Origin: Haliotis cracherodii | Lineage: Eukaryota | Reading direction: 5' to 3' | Assembly (NCBI RefSeq): GCF_022045235.1 | Contig: NW_027266271.1 | Coordinates: 14,012,001-14,076,000 of the forward strand | Length of the DNA stretch: 64,000 bases | In this document: positions 10,962 to 63,184 of the stretch, piece after piece | Layout of the letters: every line of letters begins with the position of its first letter | Position numbering within the stretch: position 1 is the first letter of the stretch | Position numbers and translations under genes: made by a program | The notes under the pieces: model-generated | What the model saw: only the letters and a program-made list of their open reading frames with translations | Told to the model about the DNA's origin: nothing | Database searches by the model: none

Positions 10962-11028
10962 ATGTCGACTTTCAGATGGAATATTTATTTCGTGGTCATG
11001 ACGACATTACCCGCAGTGTGTGATCTCG
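10962..11028 (+). CDS. Cadherin-like gene exon 1 (signal peptide)
   Basis: MSTFRWNIYFVVMTTLPAVCDL(G), followed by consensus donor GTAAGT; phase 1 joins exon 2 in frame. Confidence 0.72.
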
Positions 11029-24698: not shown

Positions 24699-26156
24699 TA
24701 TCATAGCTCTCATAGCATTGTGCAAGGAATAGATAGCATTAGGCCAGTTGAACAATTTTAACAGTAAACTTTTCATGAAATGTGAATGCGGAACTCGTTG
24801 TATAAACAAATGTTTATGATGGTCATATTTCTGTCCTGTTGAGACGTTTAATTTCCATAATGTGGCTGTTTCGCCAGAGTTCGTGAACTAAGATAAGCAA
24901 TATTAAATTATTATATGTTGAAGAATATGTATATTCTACCAATGACAACATCTCGCACTGATTTAACCCACTGGAATTAAGACATTCATTGGGTTTAACT
25001 TCTCTATTCGTTTCGAGAGCGGTGTTTTCCAGTATTATAATCTTATGTGCTCTCATAAATATATATGTTACAGAATTGTACACGTAAAAGCATTTTTTTA
25101 AATGTAATAGCATGATACTAATAACAACTCGTTCTTTGTACCTGATTGGTTCACCTTCATCCTCGTTAAGGTAGCTCTTTTGAAGACATACAACTGGTTC
25201 TCTTTCATGGATCAATCGGTAACACCTCTGTCTTCTGATCAAGTGTGATACGCTTTATTACACGTGCTTCTATGTAAAATTGTCTGTACAGATTATTCGC
25301 GGATCCGCCCTTATTCGGATCGTTGGAGCTTCAGCAACATTTCGCATCACTTCTACAATAAGCTGACAGGCTGTGATGCAAAAGAATTACTTCATATCAA
25401 AGAGGGCCTTAATTTAAATCCTTCTCTCCTCAAACTCCTGAACACGATAAAATATTAATTCTTGAAAGTCGAATCTGATACGGATATCGTTAATAAACTT
25501 ACCGTGAATTGATGAAGTTTTCTCATGTCGTGGTACAAACAAGTTATCGTCTCTCTCTTCATTTGTGGAAGGTGTGACATTATTCACGAATCGTATCCGG
25601 GGTGGATATGACATTCTGTGCATGAGATTCTGTCTAGAACATTATTTGGCAAAGACAGCGTGCTAGTTGCGTTCACTTTACTTTCTCTCAGAGCATGGAT
25701 TTCATTGACGACCCTGGGATTAAGGTAATTATAGTGACCGTTCATTGACGTCAGCTTCAAAAGTTTGTTTGAATAATTTGCGAATGTTAATCCACTTAAT
25801 TGAATCGTAAACATCACTGAAACCAAATAGCTTCCCTCGTCTCATTGTGTTCTATTGTCAGTAAGGGATTAACTACTGATCGCTAATTTGATGCTTAACG
25901 ACCAGTAATCCCAACACGGTGTCTGGCGCTTGTCGCGTTTCCACAGCAGCAACAGTAAACACAACAGCGTCACGTTCGTTATGGTGCCAATAACGTTAGC
26001 GTGACATTATAAAGTAATCAGTGTCACTTTGCCATGGATATCAGACGAGAGGAATAAAAGCAGACTGGTAGTGGGGATAGTATCACTGTCCTCGGGTAAC
26101 TGAACATAGAGCTACTTTTCTTTCTTGTAACCTGAAAATTTACATAACTTACCAAC

Positions 26157-27494
26157 ATGGAGAGATGTGAATCAGGGCTCTGTCTCCTTGACAGCGACCT
26201 CTTAGAAAACGAAGGTAAGTTGATACTCAATGACATTACAAATACAATCGATAAAGGCAAATCAATGAACAAATAATATTCATTGATCCGTTTACTATAC
26301 TATCAGGATCAGAGAATGTTTTTCGTGTCTATGAAACTATTCAAATCTCTTTTAAGATATATATAACACGCACACGAAACAACTCTCCATGTCAAATAAG
26401 TGACACAATTTATGTAACATTTTCAGATGCAAGATCGTCGGGCTATGAATCGTGTGACTCATTCACCCAGGCCCCGTCACCACCCTCAACTCCATCCTCC
26501 AAAGTCAGAGCTTCATCTAGCGGCCACAAGGAGGTAATGATGTACAGCAACATGGCCGACCTGTCAGAAAGTCTACAGTACATCACTAGTATGCCGGAGT
26601 TGTGTGACGTCACTTTTCTAGTTGGCCACCTGCAGTTTCCCATTCATGGAGTTAAAGCAATCATGGCTACCAGGAGCAGGTAAATATCCCTTACAACTGA
26701 AACACACCAATGGCCTTTTATTCGGAAACTTTTAGAAGTAAACACCGTGATTAATGTGTGTATTCCAAATTAAAGCACATGCAACAACATGGTTATCTGG
26801 CAGTTAGGATTTGAGAAAGTAGCAGTGCTTCAACACATACATTTCATCCCTGCCCCTTTATAATTATTCACACGTGTAGATGTGAGTTTCCTATGATATA
26901 TGTAGATGAAAATATACATGGTTTTTCTTTCATCTTTCCAGGGTTTTCTATCAGATGATCTTGCATCACCAGAGGAAGGTCACAGAGTCGGTGAAACCTA
27001 AATCTCGACTGAGGATGAGAGCTAAGTCGTCAACTGTCAATCTGCACAGCAAACTCCAGATCCCAATCCCAGACTACGACCATGTTGTCTTTACCAGTCT
27101 TCTTAACTTCTTACACTCCGGACGATTTCGAGTACAACTTGAAACAGTCACAGGTAAGCAGTAAAATGTGTTTGGAAGAAGAAAAACCTTTCTGCTTATC
27201 ACATTCGATATTGAAGCATTTATCTTCTTTACTGTAATAAACTGTAATATCAAGAGTGAATTATAATATGTTATTATGAATATAACATCCCCATATCAAT
27301 AGCTGCTTCTTATTTGAACAGGTTTATTCTGTGCTGCCATAGAATTTGGACTGAAGGATCTGCAGAAAGCATGCTGGGACTTCTTAAAACGGTGTGTAGG
27401 TGAAGATCAGAAGAGGGCTTTGATGACGTCAACACAACACTATCTTAAGAAGAAGGGAGCTCAGAAAATCTTGTCCCAAGTGTGCAGGTTGTGA
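26157..27494 (+). CDS. BTB/POZ domain protein (serine-enriched protein/gprs-like), array copy 1, diverged, ~231 aa
   Basis: Exons 26157-26214, 26427-26679, 26942-27153, 27322-27494. SMPELCDVTFLVG...GVKAIMATRSRVFYQM...LLNFLHSG...GLFCAAIEFGLKDLQKAC. A further exon at 27794-27856 is possible. Confidence 0.85.
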
Positions 27495-28227
27495 TTATTT
27501 GAGGACCGTAATTGCTCTGGTTTCCTATAATAAATCTCTTGGACACAGTCAAACTGTGGAACCATTAGTGCTTCAATATACATTTTCAACGACTGTCCAT
27601 TGGCTGGCATTCCGATGACCCGGGCAAAGCTGATCAAAGTGGAAACTGATGTCACTTCCTATTGATTGTTACCGGACACACAATGACAGAGATGGAGATC
27701 CCTAATCTATCTTACACAAGCGAGAAAATCAGACAGCGAGTTGAATGTAAATGCTACTTTAAATAGTATGTCAGTTATTCTTCTGTGTGTCAGCTTAGTG
27801 AGAGACGAAAGATTGAATTGACACAGAGGATATCTCTGAAAGGAAAATTATCTTAACGAAGCTTCGACCAGAGTCCTGGAACGTCTAAGGGATGTAACTC
27901 TGCATAGAGAACTATGGCGTAAATATTACTGTGTAATACTGCTTAATATTGTAAGTCGCTTAGATTGTACATTTGCTACATATGTATTGTTATCCCTTTT
28001 ATGGGAGTTGTTCGTTTTTTTCTTGTTGTCAAATGCAAATAAAAATTAAATCTATTCCTGATCCTGTGTTGTCTGATGTTCCATTTCAGGAAGACCTGGT
28101 GTCAATATTGTCTAGTTATTCTATTAAGTGTGACAGTTTGACGTTTTTCAGGAAAAGGAATATATTTTTTTAATTCTTAAATGTTTTCCTACAGTTTATC
28201 ATCACATCTTGAAGCCACTGTTTTATA

Positions 28228-28394
28228 GTGAGTGAGTGAGTTTGGTTTTACGCCGCTTTTAGCAATGTTCCAGCAATATCACGGCGGGGGACACCAGAAA
28301 TGGGCTTCACACATTGTACCCATGTCGGGATTCGAACCCGGGTCTTCGGCGTGACGAGCGAACGCTTTAACCACTAGGCTACCCGACCGCCCCC
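28228..28394 (-). mobile_element. Full-length young tRNA-derived SINE, family A
   Basis: A box TAGCCTAGTGG, B box GGTTCGAATCC, (CACT)n tail; perfect 13-bp TSD CCACTGTTTTATA at 28215 and 28395; empty site in units 2-8. Confidence 0.95.
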
Positions 28395-30591
28395 CCACTG
28401 TTTTATAATTGGCCTTTACATGCCTACGTGACTGAAGGTAACTAGGGCTTTTTTGGTTCTGATAGCAAAATGCTGGATTTTATATAATAAGCAGTAGAAA
28501 GAAAAATAGTAGAAATGAAGGAATAGCAGAGAAGAAAAGGATAGTGGTTGTTGAGAAAGTGACAGAACAAATATCTACATTTTACACATTGCAAGCATAT
28601 AAAATACCGCCATAGGATTATTTTGTCAAGCGCTGGTCATATTCTCAATTTTAAACAAAACCGCTACAATATATAGTACAGCATTATCAGTCAACCGTAT
28701 CTCAACTAACATGCGTCAACTTTTGTAACTGCATTACTCCGAACCTTCATTCCAGTTGTATCGTTTTTCTTACCACAAATCTGCAATTTCTCTCACCGTT
28801 TATCATTTGGAAATAATTAAACATGTTCTATCAGACTGAGTTCATTTTGTCGACATGCATGTCTCTTACCCAATAACATTTAAAACGAACACGCCAATCC
28901 TTTGACTAAATACGAAACTAATTTCATACACAGCCTATTGAATTCAAATGCCAGAAAAGACATGTCAGTCTGTCAAAAGACGAGAAACAGAGGCAGTGAA
29001 CATGACATCATGTTGGTAGACGTGAAATGGTTTCAGAAGTGACGGAATTCGAATATGATTAGTAAACACAACATGGTGCCAATAGTCACAGAGATGTTCC
29101 TTGTATCTGTTCATATAGAACATTCAGATATCCGTTGTCATTAATTAATGCTGTACTTAGAAGGTGTAAACTGATTTAAATACAGAGTAACTGTGTTTGA
29201 CCCAAAATATCTATCCGATGCCGATCTTCAGTCACTTTTTTATGAATATTCTTTATCGCATATGGTTTGTCCATTTCATAAAGAAACAGTGCTTTGTTGC
29301 TTTCATTTATATCCATATTTATATATTCTGTCCATATTTCATGTACAGTGCAAATTACCACTGTGATAAATAGATTACCACACATGTGAAGAGCAATAAT
29401 AACGCGAATCCATTGCAAACAAAGCAACATCTTGCAATATTCATTCTTAACGTGTCTCTATTGTGTTTTTTATTTGTTATTGGGTGTGTTTTCACAATTT
29501 AAGGTGTATACCTTCATTTTAATGTCGTAAAGTCTATCTCAAGTTTGATTCCATGTCTCATTTATAAGTAAGATTGATTCAACATCGTCTATCTGAATCC
29601 AGTTTCGATAATGACATTTCCACAACATCCAGTGTGACACGAGCTCACACATGTACTGCAGTTGTTTTATGAACCCGACACTGTACAATTCCAACCATGC
29701 ACGGAAAAAATATTTCCCAATTGTTTTGATTGAGCAATAACTGCAAATTAATAATTTCCGCTGAGCTTCTTCACTCACTTTATTCAGTATATAAAGTATA
29801 TGGTCTTTGTGTTTCAATACAAAGTGCATCTATGAAATGTAACTGTTGTTTGAACATAGAGAAAATATCCATTTCACAAGAACACAACTACATTTACAGT
29901 GTTAAACAGATTGTTATAGTTTATGGAAAGTCGGGTGTATGATAACCTTATCAGGTTCTATAACATCGCCATCAAATCAAAAGCAAGTGCATAGGGAAAC
30001 TGTTGCACTGGATTTAATGATCTTAAACTTATCAATTGAAATAGAGAAGTTAATCATCCACAATGTTTTGTTATCAACTACCAGTTGTTATAGTTAACTA
30101 CGGAAACAAACTCATTTGTGTATCTAATTGAGATATTTGGTAAGAAAACAAGCACGTTTCTTAATATATTGATTTCATACTTCTTCAATTAATACTAAAT
30201 AAACATATTGAGCACAGTACGTTCATAGTATCAAATAGTTCATCTTTCTAACGGATATCCATTTTAAACACCCTTGACGCAATTATAGAATTGTTTCTTG
30301 GAATGGGAATAGTTTTCTTCAGGTGGCGCTTTTCGTTTTCTAAAGAAGCCATCATCTCGGCTCTTCATTTACGGAACGTGTGACTTTATCCACACATCGT
30401 GTGCGGAATGAATGAGCCTAGCATGGTGCATAGTCACAAGGTTCCCTTCTTGAACAAATTCCGGAAAAGATGGATGCCACTTACTTAGTGTCAAACGCAA
30501 ACAAACTGCATTCCACTTTAGATGATTGTCAGAACACGGGTTTAATTGACGACTCCCGGGATCACAGTAATTACAATGACCGTAAGTTCAC

Positions 30592-30902
30592 TGACGTCAG
30601 CAGCGTTTTCAATCTGTTTAAATGATTTCCGAATGTTAATTCAACTAATTGAATAGTAAAAATCACTGGACGCAAATACCTTACCTAATCCGATTATGTT
30701 CTATTGTTTGTAAAGGATTAACTATTGATCGCTAGTTTGATGCTTAACGGCCTTTAATCCCCCGATCCCAACATGCTCTTTGGCACTTGTCACGTGACCA
30801 CAGCAGCAAAAGTAAACATTACAGTGTCATGTTCCTAATAATGCTAAGAGCGTTGGCGTGACATTGTAAAGTGATCAGTGTCACTTTGCGTTTGGCCACG
30901 TG
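30592..30902 (+). promoter_or_regulatory. Putative BTB-gene promoter motifs: CRE and two E-boxes, repeated in units 2-8
   Basis: TGACGTCA at 30592, GTCACGTGAC at 30789, CACGTG at 30897, all within ~430 bp of the ATG; CRE also at 25746 for copy 1. Confidence 0.4.
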
Positions 30903-31021
30903 GTATTGGAAAAGGGGTATTAAACGTGATTTGTAGAGAGCCTAACATCACTGTTCTCTGGCAATTGAACATACAGCTAGTGTTCATTCTTGTAACCGGA
31001 TAACTCATACAACTAAGCAGC

Positions 31022-32401
31022 ATGAAGAGATGTGAATCTGAGCTCTGTCTCCTTGACAGCGACCTCTTAGAAAACACAACAAACACGTTTAACAGAGATA
31101 GCGAAGGTGAGTTAATACTCAATGGTATTATGTGTGTAATCGATAAAGTCAAATAAATGAACACATAATATTCGTTGTTCCGTTCAGTATGCTCTCAGCA
31201 TAAAAAAATACTTGTTCTGAAGAAAACATAAAAAATTCATCTTTTATATGAAACCATGCAAAGCTCTTTCAAAATATAACTTTCTTGCGAATGAAACAAC
31301 TGTCCACGTCAAATGAATGGCTAAATTTATGTAACATTTTCAGATGCAAGATCGTCGGGCTATGAATCGTGTGACTCATTCACCCAGGCCCCGTCACCAC
31401 CCTCAACTCCATCCTCCAAAGTCAGAGCTTCATCTAGCGGCCACAAGGAGGTAATGATGTACAGCAACATGGCCGACCTGTCAGAAAGTCTACAGTACAT
31501 CACTAGTATGCCGGAGTTGTGTGACGTCACTTTTCTAGTTGGCAACCGGCACCTTCCCATTCATGGAGTTAAAGCAATCCTGGCTACCAGGAGCAGGTAA
31601 ATATCCCTTACAATTGAAACACGCCAATGGTCTTTTATTCGGAAACTTTTAGAAGTAAACACCGTGATAAATGTGTGTATTCCAAATTAAAGCACATGCA
31701 ACAACATGATTATCTGGCAGTAAGGATTTGAGAAAGTAGCAGTGCTTCAACACATACATTTCATCCCTGCCCTTTTATAATTATTCACACGTGCAGAGAT
31801 GAGTTTCCTATGAGATCTGCAGATGAAAATATAAATAGTTTCCCTTCATCTTTCCAGGGTTTTCTATCAGATGATCTTGCATCACCAGAGGAAGGTCACA
31901 GAGTCGGTGAAACCTAAATCTCGACTGAGGATGAGAGCCAAGTCGTCAACTGTCAATATGCACAGCAAACTCCAGATCCCAATCCCAGACTACGACCATG
32001 TTGTCTTTTCCAGTCTTCTTAACTTCTTACACTCCGGCCGAGTTCGAGTACAACTTGGAACAGTCATAGGTGAGCAGTAAAATGTGTTTGGAGGAAGAAA
32101 AACCTTTCTTCTTATGACATTCGATATTGAAGCATTTACTCCTTTACTGTAATAAACTGTAATATCAACAGTGAATTGTAATATGTTATTATGAATATAA
32201 TTTCAATGGCTGCTTCTTATTTGAACAGGTTTATTCTGTGCTGCCATAGAATTTGGACTGAAGGATCTGCAGAAAGCATGCTGGGACTTCTTAAAACGGT
32301 GTGTAGGTGAAGATCAGAAGAGGGCTTTGATGACGTCAACACAACACTATCTTAAGAAGAAGGGAGCTCAGAAAATCTTGTCCCAAGTGTGCAGGTTGTG
32401 A
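31022..32401 (+). CDS. BTB/POZ protein, copy 2 (~240 aa)
   Basis: Exons 31022-31106, 31344-31596, 31858-32069, 32229-32401; frame open. Confidence 0.85.
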
Positions 32402-35400
32402 TTATTTGAGGACAGTAATTGCTCTGGTTTCCTATAATATATCTCTTAGACACAGTCAAACTGTGGAACCATTAGTGCTTCAATATACATTTTCAACGAC
32501 TGACAATTTGGCTGGCATTCCGATGGCCCAGGCGAAGCTGTTCAAAGTGGAAACTGATGTCATTTCCTATTGATTGTTAACTGACACACAATGCCAGAGA
32601 TGGAGATCCCTGATTTTTCTTAAACAAGCGAGAAAATCAGGCAGCGAGTTGAACTTAATGCTCCTTTAAATAGTATGTCGGTTATTTTTCCGTGTGTCAG
32701 CTTAGTGAGAGACGAAAAATTGAATTGACGCAGAGGATATCTCTGAAAGGAATATTATCGGAACGAAGCTTCGACCAGAGAGTCCTGGAACGTCTAAGGG
32801 ATGTAAATATGCATAGAGAACTATGGCGTAAATATGACTGTGTAACACTTCTTAATATTGTAAGTCTCTTAGATTGTACATGTGCTATATATGTATTGTT
32901 ATCCCTTTATTGGAGTTGTTCGGTTTTTTCTTGTTGTCAAAAGCAAATAAAAATTAAATCTAATCATGATCCTGTGTTGTCTGCCTGATGTTCCATTTCA
33001 GGAAGACCTGGTGTCAATATTGTCTAGTTATTCTATTAAGTGTGACAATTTGACATTCTTCAGGAAAAGGAATATTTCTCTAATTTTTTTATGTTTTTCT
33101 TGAGTTTATTATCACATCTTGAAGCCACTACTTTATAATTGGCCTTTACATGCCTACGTGGCTGAAGGCTCCTAGGGCTTTGTCTGTTCTGATAGCAAAA
33201 GGCTGGATTTTATATAATAAGCAGTAGAAAGAAAAATAGTAGAAATGAAGGAATAGCAGAGAAGTAAATGGATAGTGGTTGATGAGAAAGTGACGAGTTT
33301 GATCAAATATGCTGCTTCTCGACAATAGGGTTGTCGCCAAAAAGTCTATCCCATTTGGACAGAACAAATATCTACATTTTACACATTGCAAGCATACAAA
33401 ATACAAGCAAAAGATCATTTTGTCCAGCGCTGGAGATATTCTCTTTTTTAAACAAAACCGCAACAATAAATAGTACAGCATTATCATTCAACCGTATCTC
33501 ATCTAACATGCGTCAACTTTTGTAACTGCATTACTCTGAACCTTCATTCCAGTTGTATTGTTTTTCTTACCACAAATCTGCAATTTCTCTCACCGTTCAT
33601 CATTTGGAAATGATTAAATAAACATGTTCTATCAGTTCATTTTCCCGACATGCATGTATCTCATCCAATAACAGATATAAAACGAACACGCCAGGTTTTT
33701 GACTAAATGCAAAACTATTTTCATACACAACATATTTAATTTAAATGCCAGAAAAAAACATGTAAATCTGTCAAAAGACGAGAAACAGAGGCAGTGGACA
33801 TGACATCATGTTGGTAGACATGGAATGGTTTCAGAAGTGATGGAATTCGAATATGATTAGTAAACACAACATGGTGCCAGTAGTCACAGAGATGTTCCTT
33901 GTATCTGTTCATATAGAACAAGATATCCGTTATCATTAATTAATGCTGTACTTAGAAGATGTAGACTGATTTAAATACAGAATAACTGTGTTTGACCTAA
34001 AAAAAACTATCCGATGCCGATATTCAGTCACTTTTTATGAATATTCTTTATCGTATATGGTTCGTCCATTTAATAAATAAGCAGTGGTTTGTTGTTTTCA
34101 TTTATATCCATATTTATATATTCTGCCCATATTTCATGTACTATGCAAATTACCACTGTGATAAATAGCATACCACAAATGTTAACAACAAATGTAACGC
34201 GAATCTATTGCAAACAAAGCAACATCTTGCAATATTCATTCTTAACGTGTCTCTATTATGCTTTTATATTTGTTATTGGGTGTGTTTTCACAATTTAAGG
34301 TGTATACATACATTTTAATGTCGTAAAGTTTATCTCAAGTTTGACTCCATGCCTCATTTCTAAGTAGGATTAATTCCACATCGTCTATCTGAATCCAGTT
34401 TCGATAATGACATTTCCACAACATCCAGTGCGACACGAGCTCACACAGCAGTTGTTTTATGCACCCGACATGCTATGGAGAACAATCATATCATTATTAT
34501 CTGTATTATTTGTCAAAACCCTCAATAATATATACACTGTACAATTCCAACCATGCATGGAAAGAATATTTCACAATTGTTGTGATTGAGCAATAACTGC
34601 AAATTAATCATTTCCTCTGGGTTTCTTCACACACTTTATTCAGTATATAAAGTATAATAAAAAAAATTATGCTCTTTGTGTCAGACTTCAATACAAAGTG
34701 CATCTATGAAATGTAACTGTTGTTTGAACATAGAGAAAATATCCATTTCACAAGAAGATAAATACATTTACAGTGTTAAACAGATTGTTATAGATTATAT
34801 GATATCGGGTGTATGATAACCTTATTAGGTTCTATAACATCGCCATCAACTCAAAAGCATGTGCATAGGGAAACTGTTGCACTGGATTTAATGATCTTAA
34901 ACTTATCAGTTAAAATAGAGAAGTTGATCATCCACACTATCTTGTTATCAATTACCAGTTGTTTTAGTTAACTGCGGAAACAAACTCACCTGTGTATATA
35001 ATGAGATATTTGGTAAGAAAACAAGCACGTTTCTTAATATATTGATTTCTTACTTCTTCATGAATAAATACGAAATAAACATATTGGTACAGTACATACA
35101 GTACGTTCATAGTATCTAATAGTTCATCTTTCTAACGGATATCCATTTTAAACACCCTTGACGCAATTTTAGGATTGTTTCTTGGAATGGGAATAGTTTT
35201 CTTCAGGTGGCGCTTTTCGTTTTCTAAAGAAGCCATCATCTCGGCTCTTCATTTACGGAACGTGTGACTTTATCCACGCAGCGTGTGCGGAATGAATGAG
35301 CCTTGCATGGTGCATAGTCAGAAAGTTCCTTTCTTGAACAAATTCCGGAAAAGATGGATGCCACTTATTTAGTGTCAAACGCAAACAAACTTCATTCCAC

Positions 35401-35911
35401 TTTAGATGATTGTCAGAACACAGGTTTAAGTTTCATTGACGACTCCCGACATCACAGTAATTGCAATGACCGTAAGTTCACTGACGTCAGCAGCGTTTTC
35501 AATCTATTTAAATCATTTCCGAATGCTAATTCAACTAATTGAATAGTAAAAATCACTGGACGCAAATGCCTTACCTAATGTGATCATGTTCTATTGTTTG
35601 TAAAGGATTAACTATTGATCGCTAATTTGATACTTAACGGCCTTTAATCCCCCGATCCCAACATGCTCTTTGGCACTTGTCACGTGACCACAGCAGCAAA
35701 AGTAAACATTACAGTGTCACGTTCCCAATAATGCTAAGAGCGTTGGCGTGACATTGTAAAGTGATCAGTGTCACTTTGCGTTTGGCCACGTGGTGTTGGA
35801 AAAGGGGTATTAAACGTGATTTGTAGAGAGCCTAACATCACTGTTCTCTGGCAATTGAACATACAGCTAATGTTCATTTTTGTAACCGGATAACTCATAC
35901 AACTAAGCAGC

Positions 35912-51957: not shown

Positions 51958-54900
51958 TTATTTGAGGACAGTAATTGCTCTGGTTTCCTATAATATATCT
52001 CTTAGACACAGTCAAACTGTGGAACCATTAGTGCTTCAATATACATTTTCAACGACTGACAATTGGCTGGCATTCCGATGGCCCAGGCGAAGCTGTTCAA
52101 AGTGGAAACTGATGTCATTTCCTATTGATTGTTAACTGACACACAATGCCAGAGATGGAGATCCCTGATTTTTCTTAAACAAGCGAGAAAATCAGACAGC
52201 GAGTTGAACTTAATGCTCCTTTAAATAGTATGTCGGTTATTTTTCCGTGTGTCAGCTTAGTGAGAGTCGAAAAATTGAATTGACGCAGAGGATATCTCTG
52301 AAAGGAATATTATCGGAACGAAGCTTCGACCAGAGAGTCCTGGAACGTCTAAGGGATGTAAATATGCATAGAGAACTATGGCGTAAATATGACTGTGTAA
52401 CACGTCTTAATATTGTAAGTCTCTTAGATTGTACATGTGCTATATATGTATTGTTATCCCTTTATGGGAGTTGTTCGGTTTTTTCTTGTTGTCAAAAGCA
52501 AATAAAAATTAAATCTAATCATGATCCTGTGTTGTCTGCCTGATGTTCCATTTCAGGAAGACCTGGTGTCAATATTGTCTAGTTATTCTATTAAGTGTGA
52601 CAATTTGACATTCTTCAGGAAAAGGAATATTTCTCTAATTTTTTTATGTTTTTCTTGAGTTTATTATCACATCTTGAAGCCACTACTTTATAATTGGCCT
52701 TTACATGCCTACGTGGCTGAAGGCTCCTAGGGCTTTGTCTGTTCTGATAGCAAAAGGCTGGATTTTATATAATAAGCAGTAGAAAGAAAAATAGTAGAAA
52801 TGAAGGAATAGCAGAGAAGTAAATGGATAGTGGTTGATGAGAAAGTGACGAGTTTGATCAAATATGCTGCTTCTCGACAATAGGGTTGTCGCCAAAAAGT
52901 CTATCCCATTTGGACAGAACAAATATCTACATTTTACACATTGCAAGCATACAAAATACAGGCAAAAGATCATGTTGTCCAGCGCTGGAGATATTCTCTA
53001 TTTTAAACAAAACCGCAACAATAAATAGTACAGCATTATCATTCAACCGTATCTCATCTAACATGCGTCAACTTTTGTAACTGCATTACTCTGAACCTTC
53101 ATTCCAGTTGTATTGTTTTTCTTACCACAAATCTGCAATTTCTCTCACCGTTCATCATTTGGAAATGATTAGATAAACATGTTCTATCAGTTCATTTTCC
53201 CGACATGCATGTATCTCATCCAATATCAGATATAAAACGAACACGCCAGGTTTTTGACTAAATGCAAAACTATTTTCATACACAACATATTTAATTTAAA
53301 TGCCAGAAAAAAACATGTAAATCTGTCAAAAGACGAGAAACAGAGGCAGTGGACATGACATCATGTTGGTAGACATGGAATGGTTTCAGAAGTGATGGAA
53401 TTCGAATATGATTAGTAAACACAACATGGTGCCAGTAGTCACAGAGATGTTCCTTGTATCTGTTCATATAGAACAAGATATCCGTTATCATTAATTAATG
53501 CTGTACTTAGAAGATGTAGACTGATTTAAATACAGAATAACTGTGTTTGACCTAAAAAAAACTATCCGATGCCGATATTCAGTCACTTTTTATGAATATT
53601 CTTTATCGTATATGGTTCGTCCATTTAATAAATAAGCAGTGGTTTGTTGTTTTCATTTATATCCATATTTATATATTCTGCCCATATTTCATGTACTATG
53701 CAAATTACCACTGTGATAAATAGCATACCACAAATGTTAACAACAAATGTAACGCGAATCTATTGCAAACAAAGCAACATCTTGCAATATTCATTCTTAA
53801 CGTGTCTCTATTATGCTTTTATATTTGTTATTGGGTGTGTTTTCACAATTTAAGGTGTATACATACATTTTAATGTCGTAAAGTTTATCTCAAGTTTGAC
53901 TCCATGCCTCATTTCTAAGTAGGATTAATTCCACATCGTCTATCTGAATCCAGTTTCGATAATGACATTTCCACAACATCCAGTGCGACACGAGCTCACA
54001 CAGCAGTTGTTTTATGCACCCGACATGCTATGGAGAACAATCATATCATTATTATCTGTATTATTTGTCAAAACCCTCAATAATATATACACTGTACAAT
54101 TCCAACCATGCATGGAAAGAATATTTCACAATTGTTGTGATTGAGCAATAACTGCAAATTAATCATTTCCTCTGGGTTTCTTCACACACTTTATTCAGTA
54201 TATAAAGTATAATAGAAAAAATTATGCTCTTTGTGTCAGACTTCAATACAAAGTGCATCTATGAAATGTAACTGTTGCTTGAACATAGAGAAAATATCCA
54301 TTTCACAAGAAGACAAATACATTTACAGTGTTAAACAGATTGTTATAGATTATATGATATCGGGTGTATGATAACCTTATTAGGTTCTATAACATCGCTA
54401 TCAACTCAAAAGCATGTGCATAGGGAAACTGTTGCACTGGATTTAATGATCTTAAACTTATCAGTTAAAATAGAGAAGTTGATCATCCACACTATCTTGT
54501 TATCAATTACCAGTTGTTTTAGTTAACTGCGGAAACAAACTCACCTGTGTATATAATGAGATATTTGGTAAGAAAACAAGCACGTTTCTTACCATATTGA
54601 TTTCTTACTTCTTCATGAATAAATACGAAATAAACATATTGGTACAGTACATACAGTACGTTCATAGTATCTAATAGTTCATCTTTCTAACGGATATCCA
54701 TTTTAAACACCCTTGACGCAATTTTAGGATTGTTTCTTGGAATGGGAATAGTTTTCTTCAGGTGGCGCTTTTCGTTTTCTAAAGAAGCCATCATCTCGGC
54801 TCTTCATTTACGGAACGTGTGACTTTATCCACGCAGCGTGTGCGGAATGAATGAGCCTTGCATGGTGCATAGTCAGAAAGTTCCTTTCTTGAACAAATTC

Positions 54901-55466
54901 CGGAAAAGATGGATGCCACTTACTTAGTGTCAAACGCAAACAAACTTCATTCCACTTTAGATGATTGTCAGAACACAGGTTTAAGTTTCATTGACGACTC
55001 CCGACATCACAGTAATTACAATGATCGTAAGTTCACTGACGTCAACAGCGTTTTCAATCTATTTAAATCATTTCCGAATGCTAATTCAACTAATTGAATA
55101 GTAAAAATCACTGGACGCAAATGCCTTACCTAATGTGATCATGTTCTATTGTTTGTAAAGGATTAACTATTGATCGCTAATTTGATACTTAACGGCCTTT
55201 AATCCCCCGATCCCAACATGCTCTTTGGCACTTGTCACGTGACCACAGCAGCAAAAGTAAACATTACAGTGTCACGTTCCCAATAATGCTAAGAGCGTTG
55301 GCGTGACATTGTAAAGTGATCAGTGTCACTTTGCGTTTGGCCACGTGGTGTTGGAAAAGGGGTATTAAACGTGATTTGTAGAGAGCCTAACATCACTGTT
55401 CTCTGGCAATTGAACATACAGCTAATGTTCATTTTTGTAACCGGATAACTCATACAACTAAGCAGC

Positions 55467-56845
55467 ATGAAGAGATGTGGATCTGAGCTCTGTCTCCTTG
55501 AGAGCGACCTCTTAGAAAACACAACAAACACGTTTAACAGAGATAGTGAAGGTGAGTTAATACGCAATGGTATTAAGTATGTAATCGATAAACTCAAATA
55601 AATGAACTCATAATATTCGTTGTTCCGTTCCGTATCTCTAAGCATAAAAAATACTTGTTCTGAAGAAAACATAAAAAACTTCATCTTTTATATGAAACTA
55701 TGCAAAGCCCTTTCAAAATATATCTTACTTGCGCATGAAACAAGTGTCCATGTCAAATGAATGGCTATATTTATGTAACATTTTCAGATGCAAGATCGTC
55801 GGGCTATGAATCGTGTGACTCATTCACCCAAGCCTCGTCATCACCTTCAACTCCATCCTCCAAAGTCAGAGCTTCATCTAGCGGCCACAAGGAGGTAACG
55901 ATGTACAGCAACATGGCCGACATGTCAGAAAGTCTACAGTACATCACTAGTATGCCGGAGTTGTGTGACGTCACTTTTCTAGTTGGCAACCGGCACCTTC
56001 CCATTCATGGAGTTAAAGCAATCCTGGCTACCAGGAGCAGGTAAATATCCCTTACAATTGAAACACGCCAATGGTCTTTTATTCGGAAACTTTTAGAAGT
56101 AAACACCGTGATAAATGTGTGTATTCCAAATTGAAGCACATGCAACAACATGATTATCTGGCAGTAAGGATTTGAGAAAGTAGCAGTGCTTCAACACATA
56201 CATTTCATCCCTGCCCTTTTATAATTATTCACACGTGCAGAGATGAGTTTCCTATGAGATCTGTAGATGGAAATATAAATAGTTTCCCTTCATCTTTCCA
56301 GGGTTTTCTATCAGATGATCTTGCATCACCAGAGGAAGGTCACAGAGTCGGTGAAACCTAAATCTCGACTGAGGATGAGACCCAAGTCGTCAACTGTCAA
56401 TATGCACAGCAAACTCCAGATCCCAATCCCAGACTACGACCATGTTGTCTTTTCCAGTCTTCTTAACTTCTTACACTCCGGCCGAGTTCGAGTACAACTT
56501 GGAACAGTCACAGGTGAGCAGTAAAATGTGTTTGGAGGAAGAAAAACCTTTCTTCTTATGACATTCGATATTGAAGCATTTACTCCTTTACTGTAATAAA
56601 CTGTAATATCAACAGTGAATTGTAATATGTTATTATGAATATAATTTCAATGGCTGCTTCTTATTTGTACAGGTTTATTCTGTGCTGCCATAGAATTTGG
56701 ACTGAAGGATCTGCAGAAAGCATGCTGGGACTTCTTAAAACGGTGTGTAGGTGAAGATCAGAAGAGGGCTTTGATGACGTCAACACAACACTATCTTAAG
56801 AAGAAGGGAGCTCAGAAAATCTTGTCCCAAGTGTGCAGGTTGTGA
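55467..56845 (+). CDS. BTB/POZ protein, copy 7
   Basis: Exons 55467-55551, 55788-56040, 56302-56513, 56673-56845. Confidence 0.85.
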
Positions 56846-59800
56846 TTATTTGAGGACAGTAATTGCTCTGGTTTCCTATAATATATCTCTTAGACACAGT
56901 CAAACTGTGGAACCATTAGTGCTTCAATATACATTTTCAACGACTGACAATTGGCTGGCATTCCGATAGCCCAGGCGAAGCTGTTCAAAGTGGAAACTGA
57001 TGTCATTTCCTATTGATTGTTAACTGACACACAATGCCAGAGATGGAGATCCCTGATTTTTCTTAAACAAGCGAGAAAATCAGACAGCGAGTTGAACTTA
57101 ATGCTCCTTTAAATAGTATGTCGGTTATTTTTCCGTGTGTTAGCTTAGTGAGAGACGAAAAATTGAATTGACGCAGAGGATATCTCTGAAAGGAATATTA
57201 TCGGAACGAAGCTTCGACCAGAGAGTCCTGGAACGTCTAAGGGATGTAAATATGCATAGAGAACTATGGCGTAAATATGACTGTGTAACACTTCTTAATA
57301 TTGTAAGTCTCTTAGATTGTACATGTGCTATATATGTATTGTTATCCCTTTATGGGAGTTGTTCGGTTTTTTCTTGTTGTCAAAAGCAAATAAAAATTAA
57401 ATCTAATCATGATCCTGTGTTGTCTGCCCGATGTTCCATTTCAGGAAGACCTGGTGTCAATATTGTCTAGTTATTCTATTAAGTGTGACAATTTGACATT
57501 CTTCAGGAAAAGGAATATTTCTCTAATTTTTTTATGTTTTTCTTGAGTTTATTATCACATCTTGAAGCCACTACTTTATAATTGGCCTTTACATGCCTAC
57601 GTGGCTGAAGGCTCCTAGGGCTTTGTCTGTTCTGATAGCAAAAGGCTGGATTTTATATAATAAGCAGTAGAAAGAAAAATAGTAGAAATGAAGGAATAGC
57701 AGAGAAGTAAATGGATAGTGGTTGATGAGAAAGTGACGAGTTTGATCAAATATGCTGCTTCTCGACAATAGGGTTGTCGCCAAAAAGTCGATCCCATTTG
57801 GACAGAACAAATATCTACATTTTACACATTGCAAGCATACAAAATACAGGCAAAAGATCATTTTGTCCAGCGCTGGAGATATTCTCTATTTTAAACAAAA
57901 CCGCAACAATAAATAGTACAGCATTATCATTCAACCGTATCTCATCTAACATGCGTCAACTTTTGTAACTGCATTACTCTGAACCTTCATTCCAGTTGTA
58001 TTGTTTTTCTTACCACAAATCTGCAATTTCTCTCACCGTTCATCATTTGGAAATGATTAGATAAACATGTTCTATCAGTTCATTTTCCCGACATGCATGT
58101 ATCTCATCCAATATCAGATATAAAACGAACACGCCAGGTTTTTGACTAAATGCAAAACTATTTTCATACACAACATATTTAATTTAAATGCCAGAAAAAA
58201 ACATGTAAATCTGTCAAAAGACGAGAAACAGAGGCAGTGGACACGACATCATGTTGGTAGACATGGAATGGTTTCAGAAGTGATGGAATTCGAATATGAT
58301 TAGTAAACACAGCATGGTGCCAGTAGTCACAGAGATGTTCCTTGTATCTGTTCATATAGAACAAGATATCCGTTATCATTAATTAATGCTGTACTTAGAA
58401 GATGTAGACTGATTTAAATACAGAATAACTGTGTTTGACCTAAAAAAAACTATCCGATGCCGATATTCAGTCACTTTTTATGAATATTCTTTATCGTATA
58501 TGGTTCGTCCATTTAATAAATAAGCAGTGGTTTGTTGTTTTCATTTATATCCATATTTATATATTCTGCCCATATTTCATGTACTATGCAAATTACCACT
58601 GTGATAAATAGCATACCACAAATGTTAACAACAAATGTAACGCGAATCTATTGCAAACAAAGCAACATCTTGCAATATTCATTCTTAACGTGTCTCTATT
58701 ATGCTTTTATATTTGTTATTGGGTGTGTTTTCACAATTTAAGGTGTATACATACATTTTAATGTCGTAAAGTTTATCTCAAGTTTGACTCCATGCCTCAT
58801 TTCTAAGTAGGATTAATTCCACATCGTCTATCTGAATCCAGTTTCGATAATGACATTTCCACAACATCCAGTGCGACACGAGCTCACACAGCAGTTGTTT
58901 TATGCACCCGACATGCTATGGAGAACAATCATATCATTATTATCTGTATTATTTGTCAAAACCCTCAATAATATATACACTGTACAATTCCAACCATGCA
59001 TGGAAAGAATATTTCACAATTGTTGTGATTGAGCAATAACTGCAAATTAATCATTTCCTCTGGGTTTCTTCACACACTTTATTCAGTATATAAAGTATAA
59101 TAGAAAAAATTATGCTCTTTGTGTCAGACTTCAATACAAAGTGCATCTATGAAATGTAACTGTTGTTTGAACATAGAGAAAATATCCATTTCACAAGAAG
59201 ACAAATACATTTACAGTGTTAAACAGATTGTTATAGATTATATGATATCGGGTGTATGATAACCTTATTAGGTTCTATAACATCGCCATCAACTCAAAAG
59301 CATGTGCATAGGGAAACTGTTGCACTGGATTTAATGATCTTAAACTTATCAGTTAAAATAGAGAAGTTGATCATCCACACTATCTTGTTATCAATTACCA
59401 GTTGTTTTAGTTAACTGCGGAAACAAACTCACCTGTGTATATAATGAGATATTTGGTAAGAAAACAAGCACGTTTCTTACCATATTGATTTCTTACTTCT
59501 TCATGAATAAATACGAAATAAACATATTGGTACAGTACATACAGTACGTTCATAGTATCTAATAGTTCATCTTTCTAATGGATATCCATTTTAAACACCC
59601 TTGACGCAATTTTAGGATTGTTTCTTGGAATGGGAATAGTTTTCTTCAGGTGGCGCTTTTCGTTTTCTAAAGAAGCCATCATCTCGGCTCTTCATTTACG
59701 GAACGTGTGACTTTATCCACGCAGCGTGTGCGGAATGAATGAGCCTTGCATGGTGCATAGTCAGAAAGTTCCTTTCTTGAACAAATTCCGGAAAAGATGG

Positions 59801-60354
59801 ATGCCACTTATTTAGTGTCAAACGCAAACAAACTTCATTCCACTTTAGATGATTGTCAGAACACAGGTTTAAGTTTCATTGACGACTCCCGACATCACAG
59901 TAATTACAATGACCGTAAGTTCACTGACGTCAGCAGCGTTTTCAATCTATTTAAATCATTTCCGAATGCTAATTCAACTAATTGAATAGTAAAAATCACT
60001 GGACGCAAATGCCTTACCTAATGTGATCATGTTCTATTGTTTGTAAAGGATTAACTATTGATCGCTAAATTGATACTTAACGGCCTTTAATCCCCCGATC
60101 CCAAAATGCTCTTTGGCACTTGTCACGTGACCACAGCAGCAAAAGTAAACATTACAGTGTCACGTTCCCAATAATGCTAAGAGCGTTGGCGTGACATTGT
60201 AAAGTGATCAGTGTCACTTTGCGTTTGGCCACGTGGTGTTGGAAAAGGGGTATTAAACGTGATTTGTAGAGAGCCTAACATCACTGTTCTCTGGCAATTG
60301 AACATACAGCTAATGTTCATTTTTGTAACCGGATAACTCATACAACTAAGCAGC

Positions 60355-61733
60355 ATGAAGAGATGTGGATCTGAGCTCTGTCTCCTTGAGAGCGACCTCT
60401 TAGAAAACACAACAAACACGTTTAACAGAGATAGTGAAGGTGAGTTAATACGCAATGGTATTATGTATGTAATCGATAAACTCAAATAAATGAACTCATA
60501 ATATTCGTTGTTCCGTTCCGTATCTCTAAGCATAAAAAATACTTGTTCTGAAGAAAACATAAAAAACTTCATCTTTTATATGAAACTATGCAAAGCCCTT
60601 TCAAAATATATCTTACTTGCGCATGAAACAAGTGTCCATGTCAAATGAATGGCTATATTTATGTAACATTTTCAGATGCAAGATCGTCGGGCTATGAATC
60701 GTGTGACTCATTCACCCAAGCCTCGTCATCACCTTCAACTCCATCCTCCAAAGTCAGAGCTTCATCTAGCGGCCACAAGGAGGTAATGATGTACAGCAAC
60801 ATGGCCGACATGTCAGAAAGTCTACAGTACATCACTAGTATGCCGGAGTTGTGTGACGTCACTTTTCTAGTTGGCAACCGGCACCTTCCCATTCATGGAG
60901 TTAAAGCAATCCTGGCTACCAGGAGCAGGTAAATATCCCTTACAATTGAAACACGCCAATGGTCTTTTATTCGGAAACTTTTAGAAGTAAACACCGTGAT
61001 AAATGTGTGTATTCCAAATTGAAGCACATGCAACAACATGATTATCTGGCAGTAAGGATTTGAGAAAGTAGCAGTGCTTCAACACATACATTTCATCCCT
61101 GCCCTTTTATAATTATTCACACGTGCAGAGATGAGTTTCCTATGAGATCTGTAGATGAAAATATAAATAGTTTCCCTTCATCTTTCCAGGGTTTTCTATC
61201 AGATGATCTTGCATCACCAGAGGAAGGTCACAGAGTCGGTGAAACCTAAATCTCGACTGAGGATGAGACCCAAGTCGTCAACTGTCAATCTGCACAGCAA
61301 ACTCCAGATCCCAATCCCAGACTACGACCATGTTGTCTTTTCCAGTCTTCTTAACTTCTTACACTCCGGCCGAGTTCGAGTACAACTTGGAACAGTCACA
61401 GGTGAGCAGTAAAATGTGTTTGGAGGAAGAAAAACCTTTCTTCTTATGACATTCGATATTGAAGCATTTACTCCTTTACTGTAATAAACTGTAATATCAA
61501 CAGTGAATTGTAATATGTTATTATGAATATAATTTCAATGGCTGCTTCTTATTTGTACAGGTTTATTCTGTGCTGCCATAGAATTTGGACTGAAGGATCT
61601 GCAGAAAGCATGCTGGGACTTCTTAAAACGGTGTGTAGGTGAAGATCAGAAGAGGGCTTTGATGACGTCAACACAACACTATCTTAAGAAGAAGGGAGCT
61701 CAGAAAATCTTGTCCCAAGTGTGCAGATTGTGA
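60355..61733 (+). CDS. BTB/POZ protein, copy 8
   Basis: Exons 60355-60439, 60676-60928, 61190-61401, 61561-61733. Confidence 0.85.
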
Positions 61734-63184
61734 TTATTTGAGGACAGTAATTGCTCTGGTTTCCTATAATATATCTCTTAGACACAGTCAAACTGTGAAA
61801 CCATTAGTGCTTCAATATACATTTTCAACGACTGACAATTGGCTGGCATTCCGATAGCCCAGGCGAAGCTGTTCAAAGTGGAAACTGATGTCATTTCCTA
61901 TTGATTGTTAACTGACACACAATGCCAGAGATGGAGATCCCTGATTTTTCTTAAACAAGCGAGAAAATCAGACAGCGAGTTGAACTTAATGCTCCTTTAA
62001 ATAGTATGTCAGTTATTTTTCCGTGTGTCAGCTTAGTGAGAGACGAAAAATTGAATTGACGCAGAGGATATCTCTGAAAGGAATATTATCGGAACGAAGC
62101 TTCGACCAGAGAGTCCTGGAACGTCTAAGGGATGTAACTATGCATAGAGAACTATGGCGTAAATATGACTGTGTAACACTTCTTAATATTGTAAGTCTCC
62201 TAGATTGTACAAGGGCTATATATGTATTGTTATCCCTTTATGGGAGTTGTTCGGTTTTTTATTGTTGTCAAATGCAAATAAATCTTAAATTTAATCATGA
62301 TCCTGTGTTGTCTGCCTGATGTTCCATTTCAGGAAGACCTGGTGTCAATATTGTCTAGTTATTCTATTAAGTGTGACAATTTGACATTCTTCAGGAAAAG
62401 GAATATTTCTCTAATTCTTTAATGTTTTCCTTGAGTTTATTATCACATCTTGAAGCCACTACTTTATAATTGACCCTTACATGCCCACCTGGCTGAAGGC
62501 TCCTAGGGCTTTGTCTGTTCTGATAGCAAAAGGCTGGATTTTATATAATAAGCAATAGAAAGAAAAATAGCAGAAATGAAGGAATAGCAGAGAAGTAAAT
62601 GGATAGTGGTTGATGAGAAAGTGACGAGTTTGATCAAATATGCTGCTTCTCGACAATAGGGTTGTCGCCAAAAGGCCTATCCCATTTGGACAGAACAAAT
62701 ATCTACATTTTACACATTGCAAGCATATAAAATACAGGCAAAAGATCCTTTCGTCCAGCGCTGGAGATATTCTCTGTTTTAAACAAACCCGCAACAATAA
62801 ATAGTACAGCATTATCATTCAACCGTATCTCATCTAACATGCGTCAACTTTTGTAACTGCATTACTCTGAACCTTCATTCCAGTTGTATTGTTTTTTCTT
62901 ACCACAAATCTGCAATTTCTCTCACCGTTCATCATTTGGAAATGATTAATTAAACATGTTCTATCAGTTCATTTTCCCGACACGCATGTATCTCATCCAA
63001 TAACACATATAAATTGAACACGCCAGTTTTAGTTTTTGACGAGACGAGAAACAGAGGCAGTGGACATGACATCGTGTTGGTAGACGTGGAATGGTTTCAG
63101 AAGTGATGGAATTCGAATATGATTAGTAAACACAACATGGTGCCAGTAGTCACAGAGATGTTCCTTGTATCTGTTCATATAGAT

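What the first reader, a model, noticed from the sequence alone, without database searches (positions are those of the whole stretch)
25520..63183. Recent 8-copy tandem amplification of a short BTB-only gene
Seen: 8 head-to-tail ~4.89-kb units, each with 4 intact exons and splice sites and no stop or frameshift. Copies 3-8 differ by only scattered SNPs. Known: the SMPELCDVTFLVG motif typifies serine-enriched protein/gprs BTB domains, and many BTB proteins are Cullin-3 adaptors or oligomerisation modules. Inference: a 231-240 aa protein with no recognisable substrate-binding domain, amplified with its promoter, could be a dosage-selected, copy-number-variable regulator or a CUL3/BTB decoy.
Basis: partly seen in the sequence, partly recalled or inferred. 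Interest (0 to 1): 0.78.

Follow-up and report, generated by a model that had tools for sequence, protein, structure and literature searches.

The report
Tandem array of small BTB genes
A black abalone chromosome carries a head-to-tail array of near-identical 4.9-kb units, each holding a complete small BTB-domain gene; the genes are already annotated automatically and similar arrays occur in other abalone, so this is a real but fairly ordinary amplified gene family of unknown function.

Summary
The window has 8 head-to-tail units (period 4888-4917 bp, 25700-63183). U3-U7 are 99.4-99.7% alike, U2 97.8%, and U1 is older. Each unit carries an intact 4-exon gene of 240 aa (231 aa in U1).

The array runs past the window to 11 gene copies, including a 10.6-kb higher-order duplication marked by a transposon.

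RefSeq already lists the genes as "serine-enriched protein-like" of Haliotis cracherodii (XP_071101811-821). H. rufescens and H. asinina have several close copies each, so the multi-copy state is old and only the top layer is recent.

Spliced RNA contigs from a congener match all three introns exactly. Older copies show purifying selection (dN/dS about 0.24).

The protein is a disordered N-terminus with a conserved SSGYES motif, followed by a BTB domain and two 3-box-like helices. Its nearest folds are KEAP1 and SPOP.

A CUL3 adaptor or decoy role is untested. The one raw-read DNA run did not show the expected excess depth, but my chosen stretch lacked a single-copy control, so that test is inconclusive.

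The scan has noted similar BTB arrays on other pieces of this genome (s1-829606, s1-834521, s1-823190, s1-832025).

Verdict: new member of a known kind, moderate interest.

The parts
25700..63183 (+). The part of the tandem array inside the window (7.7 units; the array continues beyond the window end)
25700..29677 (+). Unit U1, the old copy. Its 5' part is 20-30% diverged from the other units. Gene: ATG 26157, exon 0 CDS 26157-26214, exon A 26427-26679, exon B 26942-27153, exon C 27322-27494 (stop). 231 aa = XP_071101811 (P0171).
29678..34568 (+). Unit U2 (97.8% alike to U3-U7). Exons 31022-31106, 31344-31596, 31858-32069, 32229-32401. 240 aa = P0151.
34569..39456 (+). Unit U3. Exons 35912-35996, 36235-36487, 36749-36960, 37120-37292 = P0175.
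39457..44344 (+). Unit U4, used as the reference unit. Exon 0 runs from at least 40659 to 40886 (ATG at 40802), exon A 41123-41375, exon B 41637-41848, exon C 42008-42180 (TGA stop), with a 3'UTR to at least 42722 = P0175.
44345..49233 (+). Unit U5. Exons 45690-45774, 46011-46263, 46525-46736, 46896-47068 = P0177.
49234..54121 (+). Unit U6. Exons 50579-50663, 50900-51152, 51414-51625, 51785-51957 = P0169.
54122..59009 (+). Unit U7. Exons 55467-55551, 55788-56040, 56302-56513, 56673-56845 = P0168.
59010..63183 (+). Unit U8, cut short by a transposon, with a 77-bp deletion at 63030-63042. Exons 60355-60439, 60676-60928, 61190-61401, 61561-61733 = P0170.
60212..62275 (+). Stretch of U8 covered by spliced RNA contigs of a congener. 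Pieces 60212-60439, 60676-60928, 61190-61401 and 61561-62275, joined at GT..AG introns.
63184..64000 (.). Dispersed transposon with about 130-bp inverted ends, inserted in U8. The insert is about 950 bp and runs past the window end. The same insert, 100% identical over 817 bases, lies after U10.
28228..28394 (-). 167-bp tRNA-like SINE inserted in U1 only
   Evidence: ARAGORN calls no tRNA there
40372..40379 (+). Palindrome TGACGTCA (a CRE-type site) about 290 bp upstream of the first RNA-covered base. It is present at the same place in all 8 units (25746, 30592, 35482, 40372, 45260, 50149, 55037, 59925).
   Evidence: function not tested

Best explanation
This is a real, old, multi-copy locus of black abalone (Haliotis cracherodii). 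It is a tandem array of 11 complete transcription units, 8 of them in the window. Each unit encodes a 240-aa gprs-type protein made of three parts: a disordered N-terminus with a conserved SSGY[E/D]S motif, a dimer-type BTB domain with a basic loop, and two 3-box-like helices. Shown: the array structure, the intact genes, their RefSeq annotation, splicing in a congener, purifying selection on the older copies, and several copies in two other Haliotis species. Inferred: the array is kept and turned over by unequal crossing-over and gene conversion. This gave the species-specific burst U3-U8/U10 and the 10.6-kb duplication [U8-transposon-U9] to [U10-transposon-U11]. Many copies are probably kept because dose matters. 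More weakly inferred: the protein dimerises and docks on cullin-3 through its BTB and 3-box. Having no folded substrate domain, it would act either as an adaptor that recruits partners through its N-terminal motifs or as a competitor for CUL3, and the SSGYES motif may make it short-lived.
For: Structure: (the higher-order repeat is 99.78% identical over 10,198 bp). Not a mobile element: the spacer is found only at this locus. Unit-specific variants: 176 biallelic sites among U2-U8, 17 of them shared, mostly by neighbouring units. The published assembly was built from 37x HiFi reads with read N50 15,971 bp (PMC9709981, passages). Genes: all 11 copies are intact and match RefSeq proteins. RNA: contigs in X19 and X20 are joined exactly at the three introns once the tool's stated cut shifts are applied. 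Selection: U9 vs U4 gives dS 0.156, dN 0.037 and a ratio of 0.24. Coding exons are 2.8-12.9% diverged against 6-18% for introns and UTR. Other species: 6 H. rufescens accessions (4 distinct proteins), 9 H. asinina accessions (7 proteins) and 1 H. rubra protein. Species-specific clades: H. asinina 97/99, and H. cracherodii U3-U8/U10 100/96. Protein: Pfam BTB at 3.3e-16. In the AF2 model residues 1-61 are disordered, followed by BTB and helices 211-222 and 228-239. Best fold matches are KEAP1 BTB/3-box (Z 14.1, 155 residues aligned) and SPOP BTB/3-box (Z 13.8, 147 aligned to residue 324). SSGYxS occurs in 25 of 33 aligned family members.
Against: Depth: the raw-read DNA run X21 gave a mean depth of about 0.86 over the unit (my mean of 25 bins). 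In addition, 346 of 352 laid reads fitted only in part. My stretch had no single-copy control, since its only non-array part is a transposon at depth 9-22. The tool also warns that a dip in depth is no finding. Copy number in that sample is therefore unsupported rather than refuted. Expression: the one RNA-labelled run of the window's own species that I laid (X22) showed no gene exon. Runs X23 and X24 held next to none of the stretch's words. Expression in H. cracherodii itself is therefore not shown. Selection: the young copies differ by too few changes to show it (U5, U6, U7 and U8 vs U4 give 1N/1S, 1N/0S, 3N/0S and 3N/1S). CUL3: binding was not tested. A V-T-E triplet sits in a longer, low-confidence loop and is not conserved in paralogues.
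Confidence: 0.6

Rival explanations
1. Assembly over-expansion: the true locus has fewer units, and the near-identical copies U3-U7 were multiplied by the assembler.
For: X21 depth on the unit is about 0.86, with no excess. U3-U7 are 99.4-99.7% alike over 24 kb, which is longer than a mean HiFi read.
Against: Each unit has its own variants: 33 singletons in U3-U7 and 17 shared sites. That is far more than a Q62 assembly would produce by error (PMC9709981). The transposon-marked 10.6-kb duplication and the mosaic U9 are complex structures. Independent assemblies of H. rufescens and H. asinina also give several close copies on one contig. A different family array on C7 has the same look. The X21 test had no valid control.
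Confidence: 0.1
2. Neutral birth-and-death: the array is an unstable segmental copy-number variant. One or a few copies do the work, the extra copies bring no benefit, and they will decay.
For: Young copies show about as many non-synonymous as synonymous changes. U1 has a 20-30% diverged 5' region and a 9-codon shorter first exon. Transposon and SINE insertions occur within the array.
Against: All 11 of 11 copies are intact, including copies 10-14% diverged in their introns. Old pairs give dN/dS of 0.21-0.31. Several close copies are kept in three Haliotis species. Other family members also sit in homogeneous arrays here, and by run of accession numbers also in Mya arenaria.
Confidence: 0.22
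3. The protein does not work through cullin-3. It would instead be a BTB oligomerisation module, for example in chromatin or transcription, or a partner of other BTB proteins. It could also be mainly a substrate of an SCF ligase through its SSGYES motif.
For: BTB cores of ZBTB8A, PLZF and BCL6 score as high as KEAP1 on the core alone (Z 12.5-13.9). The phi-x-E motif that I recall as typical of CUL3 binders is not conserved in the family. SSGYES differs by one residue from the PER2 degron SSGYGS, which the authors liken to the beta-TrCP motif (PMC11223080, passage).
Against: The two C-terminal helices align only with 3-box-bearing chains: KEAP1 to residue 206, SPOP to 324, KLHL11 to 227, and plant NPR1. 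The best profile matches in the PDB are BTBD6, SPOP, KLHL3, gigaxonin and KBTBD4. There is no DNA-binding domain.
Confidence: 0.3

Closest known systems
gprs / 'serine-enriched protein' BTB family (named after the Drosophila gene; the names on these proteins are automatic)
   Same: The protein is 36% identical over 182 aa (E 3e-35) to 'serine-enriched protein isoform X3' of the bee Ceratina, which carries the identical SMPELCDVTFLVGN stretch. The match covers the BTB, the basic loop and the 3-box region. NCBI names the abalone, oyster, scallop and mussel proteins 'serine-enriched protein-like', and Mya proteins 'GPRS-like'.
   Different: The mollusc proteins stop right after the 3-box (224-301 aa). 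They have their own N-terminal extension with the SSGY[E/D]S motif, which the bee protein lacks, since its BTB starts at residue 17. I found no function for gprs in the paper library.
CUL3 substrate adaptors with BTB and 3-box (SPOP, KEAP1, KLHL3, KLHL11)
   Same: The fold matches over residues 60-240, including the two helices after the BTB. They are also the best profile matches in the PDB.
   Different: There is no MATH, Kelch or other folded substrate-binding domain. There is a 20-residue basic insert in the loop where the CUL3-contacting motif would lie. CUL3 binding was not tested.
Gene-bearing macrosatellites and tandemly amplified gene families. The examples DUX4/D4Z4, USP17/RS447 and the rodent Tdpoz MATH-BTB cluster are recalled, not checked here.
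   Same: Kilobase-sized head-to-tail units, each with a whole gene, very high identity between units, and turnover specific to each species.
   Different: Here the units hold a spliced 4-exon gene with 2.8 kb of spacer. Copy-number variation between individuals has not been shown.

Membership tests
BTB/POZ domain (Pfam PF00651) | Match to the family model above its curated cut-off | tested here: met
   P0175 (the U3/U4 protein) scores 59.9 bits against a cut-off of 20.5, E 3.3e-16, residues 86-206. Single exons alone stay below the cut-off at 17.3 and 17.6 bits.
BTB/POZ domain (Pfam PF00651) | BTB fold | tested here: met
   In the AF2 model, pLDDT is 88-95 over most of the core. KEAP1 gives Z 14.0 at rmsd 3.0 over 127 residues, and BTBD6 gives Z 12.8 at rmsd 1.6 over 101 residues.
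gprs / serine-enriched protein family | Specific sequence similarity to proteins of that name, including an insect one | tested here: met
   (E 3e-35, 36% identity over 182 aa)
gprs / serine-enriched protein family | Long serine-rich region after the BTB, as in the Drosophila protein (recalled, not checked) | tested here: not met
   The protein ends at residue 240, just after the 3-box-like helices.
CUL3 adaptor (BTB with 3-box) | Paired helices (3-box) directly after the BTB | tested here: met
   Helices 211-222 and 228-239 align to SPOP up to residue 324 and to KEAP1 up to residue 206. This is a match at the level of a predicted fold only.
CUL3 adaptor (BTB with 3-box) | phi-x-E motif in the loop after helix 3 (recalled from the KLHL11-CUL3 work) | tested here: inconclusive
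   V126-T-E128 is present in all Haliotis copies. It lies about 3 residues later than in my recalled alignment, next to a low-confidence loop, and is not conserved in paralogues.
CUL3 adaptor (BTB with 3-box) | A substrate-binding domain | tested here: not met
   No second Pfam family reaches its cut-off. The N-terminal 61 residues are predicted disordered.
CUL3 adaptor (BTB with 3-box) | Physical binding to the CUL3 N-terminal domain | not testable with these tools
   No complex prediction or experiment is available here.
Gene-bearing macrosatellite / amplified gene array | Head-to-tail kilobase units of very high identity, each with a complete gene | tested here: met
Gene-bearing macrosatellite / amplified gene array | Copy number varies between individuals | tested here: inconclusive
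   The only raw-read run showed no excess depth, but the stretch had no valid control. Between species, the accession counts are 11, at least 6, and at least 9.
beta-TrCP-type phosphodegron | D/S-pS-G-x-x-pS motif in a disordered region | tested here: inconclusive
   SSGYES lies at residues 32-37 in a disordered stretch, and SSGYxS occurs in 25 of 33 aligned members. This is resemblance to PER2 SSGYGS only (PMC11223080). Phosphorylation and binding were not tested.

The most novel reading that the evidence does not exclude
Molluscs may keep a family of degron-tagged BTB/3-box proteins as homogenised, gene-bearing macrosatellites. Array copy number would then set the dose of a short-lived cullin-3 binder that has no substrate domain. 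This would make a heritable, copy-number-tunable brake or buffer on CUL3 ligase capacity, re-amplified independently in each lineage (Haliotis species, several arrays within one genome, and perhaps Mya).
Probability: 0.12. Interest if true: 0.7.

Novelty: new member of a known kind. Interest (0 to 1): 0.4.

Why it matters
If the dose idea is right, array length would be a simple heritable dial on ubiquitin-ligase activity in an endangered, disease-struck animal. It would also give a marker for copy-number surveys in abalone populations. As it stands, this is a clean, well-bounded example of concerted evolution in a spliced gene array. It also shows that the 'serine-enriched protein-like' genes of molluscs are BTB/3-box proteins with a conserved N-terminal motif, and no function has been published for them in the library I could search.

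Tried and rejected
**Fourth coding exon.** I first considered a further coding exon at 42479-42637. It has an open frame in U2-U8. I rejected it for three reasons: it is broken in U1, it is the most diverged segment between U9 and U4 at 18.2%, and the RNA contig runs straight through it as 3'UTR. RefSeq does use that region in one alternative model, P0178.

**Interferon-type promoter motif** (a lead from note s1-823190). GAAANNGAAAS has 0 matches in the array and 1 elsewhere in the window, against 1.9 expected. It is not supported here.

**Unit as a mobile element.** Rejected, because the spacer is found only at this locus.

**True tRNA gene in U1.** Rfam scores 30.9 bits against a cut-off of 29 and ARAGORN finds none. 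The piece is a high-copy SINE.

**Exon-by-exon searches.** The PDB searches gave nothing useful.

**Literature.**
- No paper in the library holds 'serine-enriched protein' in a relevant sense.
- Nothing relevant came from BTB + abalone + tandem, BTB + lineage-specific expansion + mollusc, BTB + tandem array + concerted evolution, gprs + BTB + Drosophila or Haliotis + BTB + transcriptome.
- The 2026 black abalone ancient-DNA paper has no occurrence of BTB, cullin, tandem or copy number in its main text.
- The H. laevigata preprint mentions only an unrelated BTBD16-like gene.
- Supplementary tables of these papers were closed and may list such genes.

**Protein Atlas.** It gave only generic BTB clusters.

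**Depth test.** It was inconclusive because of my choice of stretch.


Full report
**What is there**

The window is G000:C8:14012001-14076000.
- Self-comparison shows one tandem array on the + strand.
- The BTB motif occurs 8 times, spaced 4917, 4891, 4888, 4888, 4889, 4888 and 4888 bp.
- Similarity to the unit starts at about 25700 (75% there, 93% from 26330) and ends at 63183, after a 77-bp deletion.
- U3-U7 are 99.37-99.71% alike and U2 is about 97.8% alike to them.
- U1 is much older. It is 90-93% alike in its 3' two thirds and 20-30% diverged upstream of and in its first exon and first intron.
- Tandem Repeats Finder cannot see periods this long.
- The only N run (7464-7652) is outside the array.

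**The array is larger than the window**

A six-frame search of the genome with exon A found 11 copies on C8. I fetched the next 30 kb and laid the unit on it.
- After U8 comes an insert of about 950 bp, then U9 (91% alike), U10 (98.6%), the same insert again, and U11 (87%), with remnants up to about 15.5 kb past the window end.
- The stretch 58000-68195 is repeated at 68602-78799 (running coordinates) with 99.78% identity over 10,198 bp. So a block [U8-insert-U9] was duplicated as a whole.
- The insert is a dispersed transposon with about 130-bp inverted ends. It has 2541 first-look candidates in the genome, and the best non-local copy is 90% alike.
- The unit itself is not a mobile element. 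Both halves of the spacer occur only at this locus, apart from one segment of about 260 bp with 73-76% matches elsewhere.
- U9's 3' spacer is about 100% alike to that of U4, while its gene part is about 90% alike. The units are therefore mosaics.

**The gene**

Reading U4 and aligning all 11 copies gives four exons:
- exon 0, with the ATG (85 coding bases; 58 in U1);
- exon A (253 bases);
- exon B (212 bases);
- exon C (173 bases up to TGA).

All have AG/GT splice sites and none has a stop or frameshift.

Instead, exon A alone went to the large representative library. That search returned a 236-aa abalone protein. Its relatives include P0151, named 'serine-enriched protein-like [Haliotis cracherodii]', on a contig of 32,474,904 bases, which is the length of C8. 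This names the organism.

The 90% cluster holds XP_071101811, 813-819 and 821 of H. cracherodii. For each of the 8 window copies, all four exon translations are found in one of these proteins. For U9 and U11, three of four are found, because RefSeq gives them another 3' end. The genes are therefore already annotated, automatically.

**RNA**

Only one read-laying run was allowed. I laid 58400-64000 with one raw DNA run and three runs guessed to be RNA.

Two runs of a related species (coded organism B) hold spliced contigs:
- A 1182-nt contig (depth 290) covers 60674-60925, 61187-61397 and 61557-62275.
- A second run has the first of these joints.
- A 228-nt contig covers 60212-60439 and is joined to 60674.

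With the cut shifts that the tool states (+2, +3, +4), the joints fall exactly on the exon ends (60439|60676, 60928|61190, 61401|61561). All three joints are GT..AG.

The last exon runs on for at least 540 bases past the stop, so the extra exon I had first considered is UTR. The contigs carry H98Q and V209E (my reading of the changes at 60884 and 61636). These are the residues of the H. rufescens proteins, so the RNA comes from the orthologous array of a red-abalone-type genome.

Against this, the laid run of the window's own species (X22) shows no gene exon. It is small, at 88 million letters.

**Copy-number test**

The raw DNA run X21 gave a mean depth of 0.86 over the 25 array bins (my mean). 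About 1.6 would be expected for a single copy, from 1938 million letters read over a 1182-million-base genome. In addition, 346 of 352 laid reads fitted only in part. This does not show the 13-16-fold depth that 8-10 copies predict.

I cannot take it as a refutation, for three reasons:
- The only non-array part of my stretch is the transposon (depth 9-22), so there is no single-copy control.
- The share of the run that is abalone DNA is unknown.
- The tool says a dip in depth is no finding.

The following speak for a real array:
- Each unit has its own variants: 176 biallelic sites among U2-U8, with 33 singletons in U3-U7 and 17 shared sites, mostly between neighbours.
- The published assembly is from 37x HiFi reads with read N50 15,971 bp and quality Q62 (PMC9709981, passages).
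- The transposon-marked block duplication is a complex structure.
- Independent assemblies of H. rufescens (6 accessions, 4 proteins) and H. asinina (9 accessions, 7 proteins, numbered XP_067687030-039) hold several close copies on one contig.

**Evolution**

Selection on the older copies:
- U9 vs U4 gives dS 0.156, dN 0.037 and a ratio of 0.24.
- U2 vs U9 gives 0.21 and U1 vs U9 gives 0.31.
- Between U9 and U4, coding exons are 2.8-12.9% diverged, against 6.1-14.2% for introns and 10.8-18.2% for the 3'UTR.

The protein is therefore under purifying selection.

U1 vs U4 has dS 0.034 against 12% intron divergence. This suggests that U1's exons were overwritten by neighbours through gene conversion, which is an inference. 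The young copies differ too little to judge.

A protein tree of 23 rows was built from 8 H. cracherodii, 4 H. rufescens, 7 H. asinina and 1 H. rubra proteins plus 3 outgroups, with nothing dropped.
- The H. asinina copies form one clade (97/99).
- U3-U8/U10 form another (100/96).
- U1, U2, U9/U11 and the H. rufescens proteins are left unresolved.

So the last burst is specific to black abalone, but the multi-copy state is older than the species.

The same genome holds other homogeneous arrays of diverged family members:
- At least 15 copies at a period of 4392 bp on C7, 99.7-99.9% alike over the first 1819-bp match.
- 9 copies at a period of about 3893 bp.
- Smaller groups on C67, C7 and C11.

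There were 49 exon-A matches in all, which is a lower bound.

In Mya arenaria, 'GPRS-like' proteins WAQ94851 and WAQ94854-94859 share one 90% cluster and one contig. I read this as a likely array, from the run of accession numbers only.

**The protein**

- BTB is the only Pfam family above its cut-off (3.3e-16, residues 86-206).
- An AF2 model built on 33 family sequences (mean pLDDT 74) has residues 1-61 and 139-147 disordered. It shows a BTB core with its N-terminal helix, and two further helices at 211-222 and 228-239.
- Foldseek and the second-look aligner put KEAP1 BTB/3-box (Z 14.1, 155 aligned), SPOP BTB/3-box (Z 13.8, 147 aligned up to residue 324), and the KEAP1-CUL3 and KLHL11-CUL3 entries on top. 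ZBTB cores tie with them on the core alone.
- A family profile finds BTBD6, SPOP, KLHL3 and gigaxonin first in the PDB.
- The protein is 36% identical over 182 aa to a bee 'serine-enriched protein' isoform that has the same SMPELCDVTFLVGN stretch.
- SSGYES is one residue away from the PER2 degron SSGYGS, which its authors liken to the beta-TrCP motif (PMC11223080, passage). This is a lead, not a test.

**How it most likely works**

Shown: this is a spliced, constrained gene that is kept in many copies.

Inferred: unequal crossing-over and conversion keep the units alike and change their number, and a high dose of the product is wanted. The product most likely dimerises through its BTB and docks on cullin-3 through the BTB and 3-box. 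Lacking a folded substrate domain, it would either recruit partners through its N-terminal motifs or compete with full adaptors, and its level may be limited by a phosphodegron. My odds are about 0.85 for the structural and evolutionary part and about 0.3 for the CUL3 mechanism.

**Comparison and novelty**

The kind of feature is known: amplified gene arrays, gene-bearing macrosatellites and lineage-specific BTB expansions. The genes are in RefSeq. I found no paper on this family or its arrays in molluscs, and supplements were closed. The scan's own notes list similar BTB arrays on other pieces of this genome. I rate it a new member of a known kind, of moderate interest.

Noticed in passing
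window 10038-10864: A 43-bp tandem repeat, 19.2 copies, 91% matches. It lies just before the receptor-like gene that another note places at 10962-21718.
   Followed up: no
window 28228-28394: A young, high-copy 167-bp SINE with a tRNA-like part (Rfam tRNA 30.9 bits; ARAGORN finds none). It has at least 908 first-look candidates in the genome, and the 40 scored are 97-99% alike, so the element was active recently.
   Followed up: partly
window 63184-64000 and L031 1-135: A transposon of about 950 bp with about 130-bp inverted ends and 2541 first-look candidates. Contigs of the RNA-labelled runs cover it at depths in the thousands, so copies of the family are transcribed or very abundant.
   Followed up: partly
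window 60598-60618 (intron 0 of U8): Contigs of three runs (X19, X20, X22) all leave the unit at 60618 with the same unlike letters. A short piece here is shared with something expressed elsewhere.
   Followed up: no
G000:C7:9430512-9492277 and C7:9388504-9419855: Two further homogeneous arrays of diverged family members, with periods of 4392 and about 3893 bp, at least 15 and 9 copies, and 99.7-99.9% identity in the first. They share no DNA similarity with this array.
   Followed up: partly
P0178 (RefSeq model of U9/U11): An alternative 3' end of 254 aa that splices out of exon C after FLKRC into the region I first took for a fourth exon. It is not seen in the congener's RNA contig.
   Followed up: no
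family alignment A2: Several bivalve members end in E/T-S/T-I/T-V (RESIV, RETIV, LETTV, LTTTV, KQTSV). From recall, this looks like a PDZ-binding tail. The abalone copies lack it.
   Followed up: no
window 41301-41308 and 42110-42117 (and the same places in every unit): Two more TGACGTCA palindromes lie inside coding exons A and C. With the upstream one, that makes three per 4.9-kb unit, against 1.09 expected per 64 kb. The one in exon A overlaps the conserved CDVT codons.
   Followed up: no
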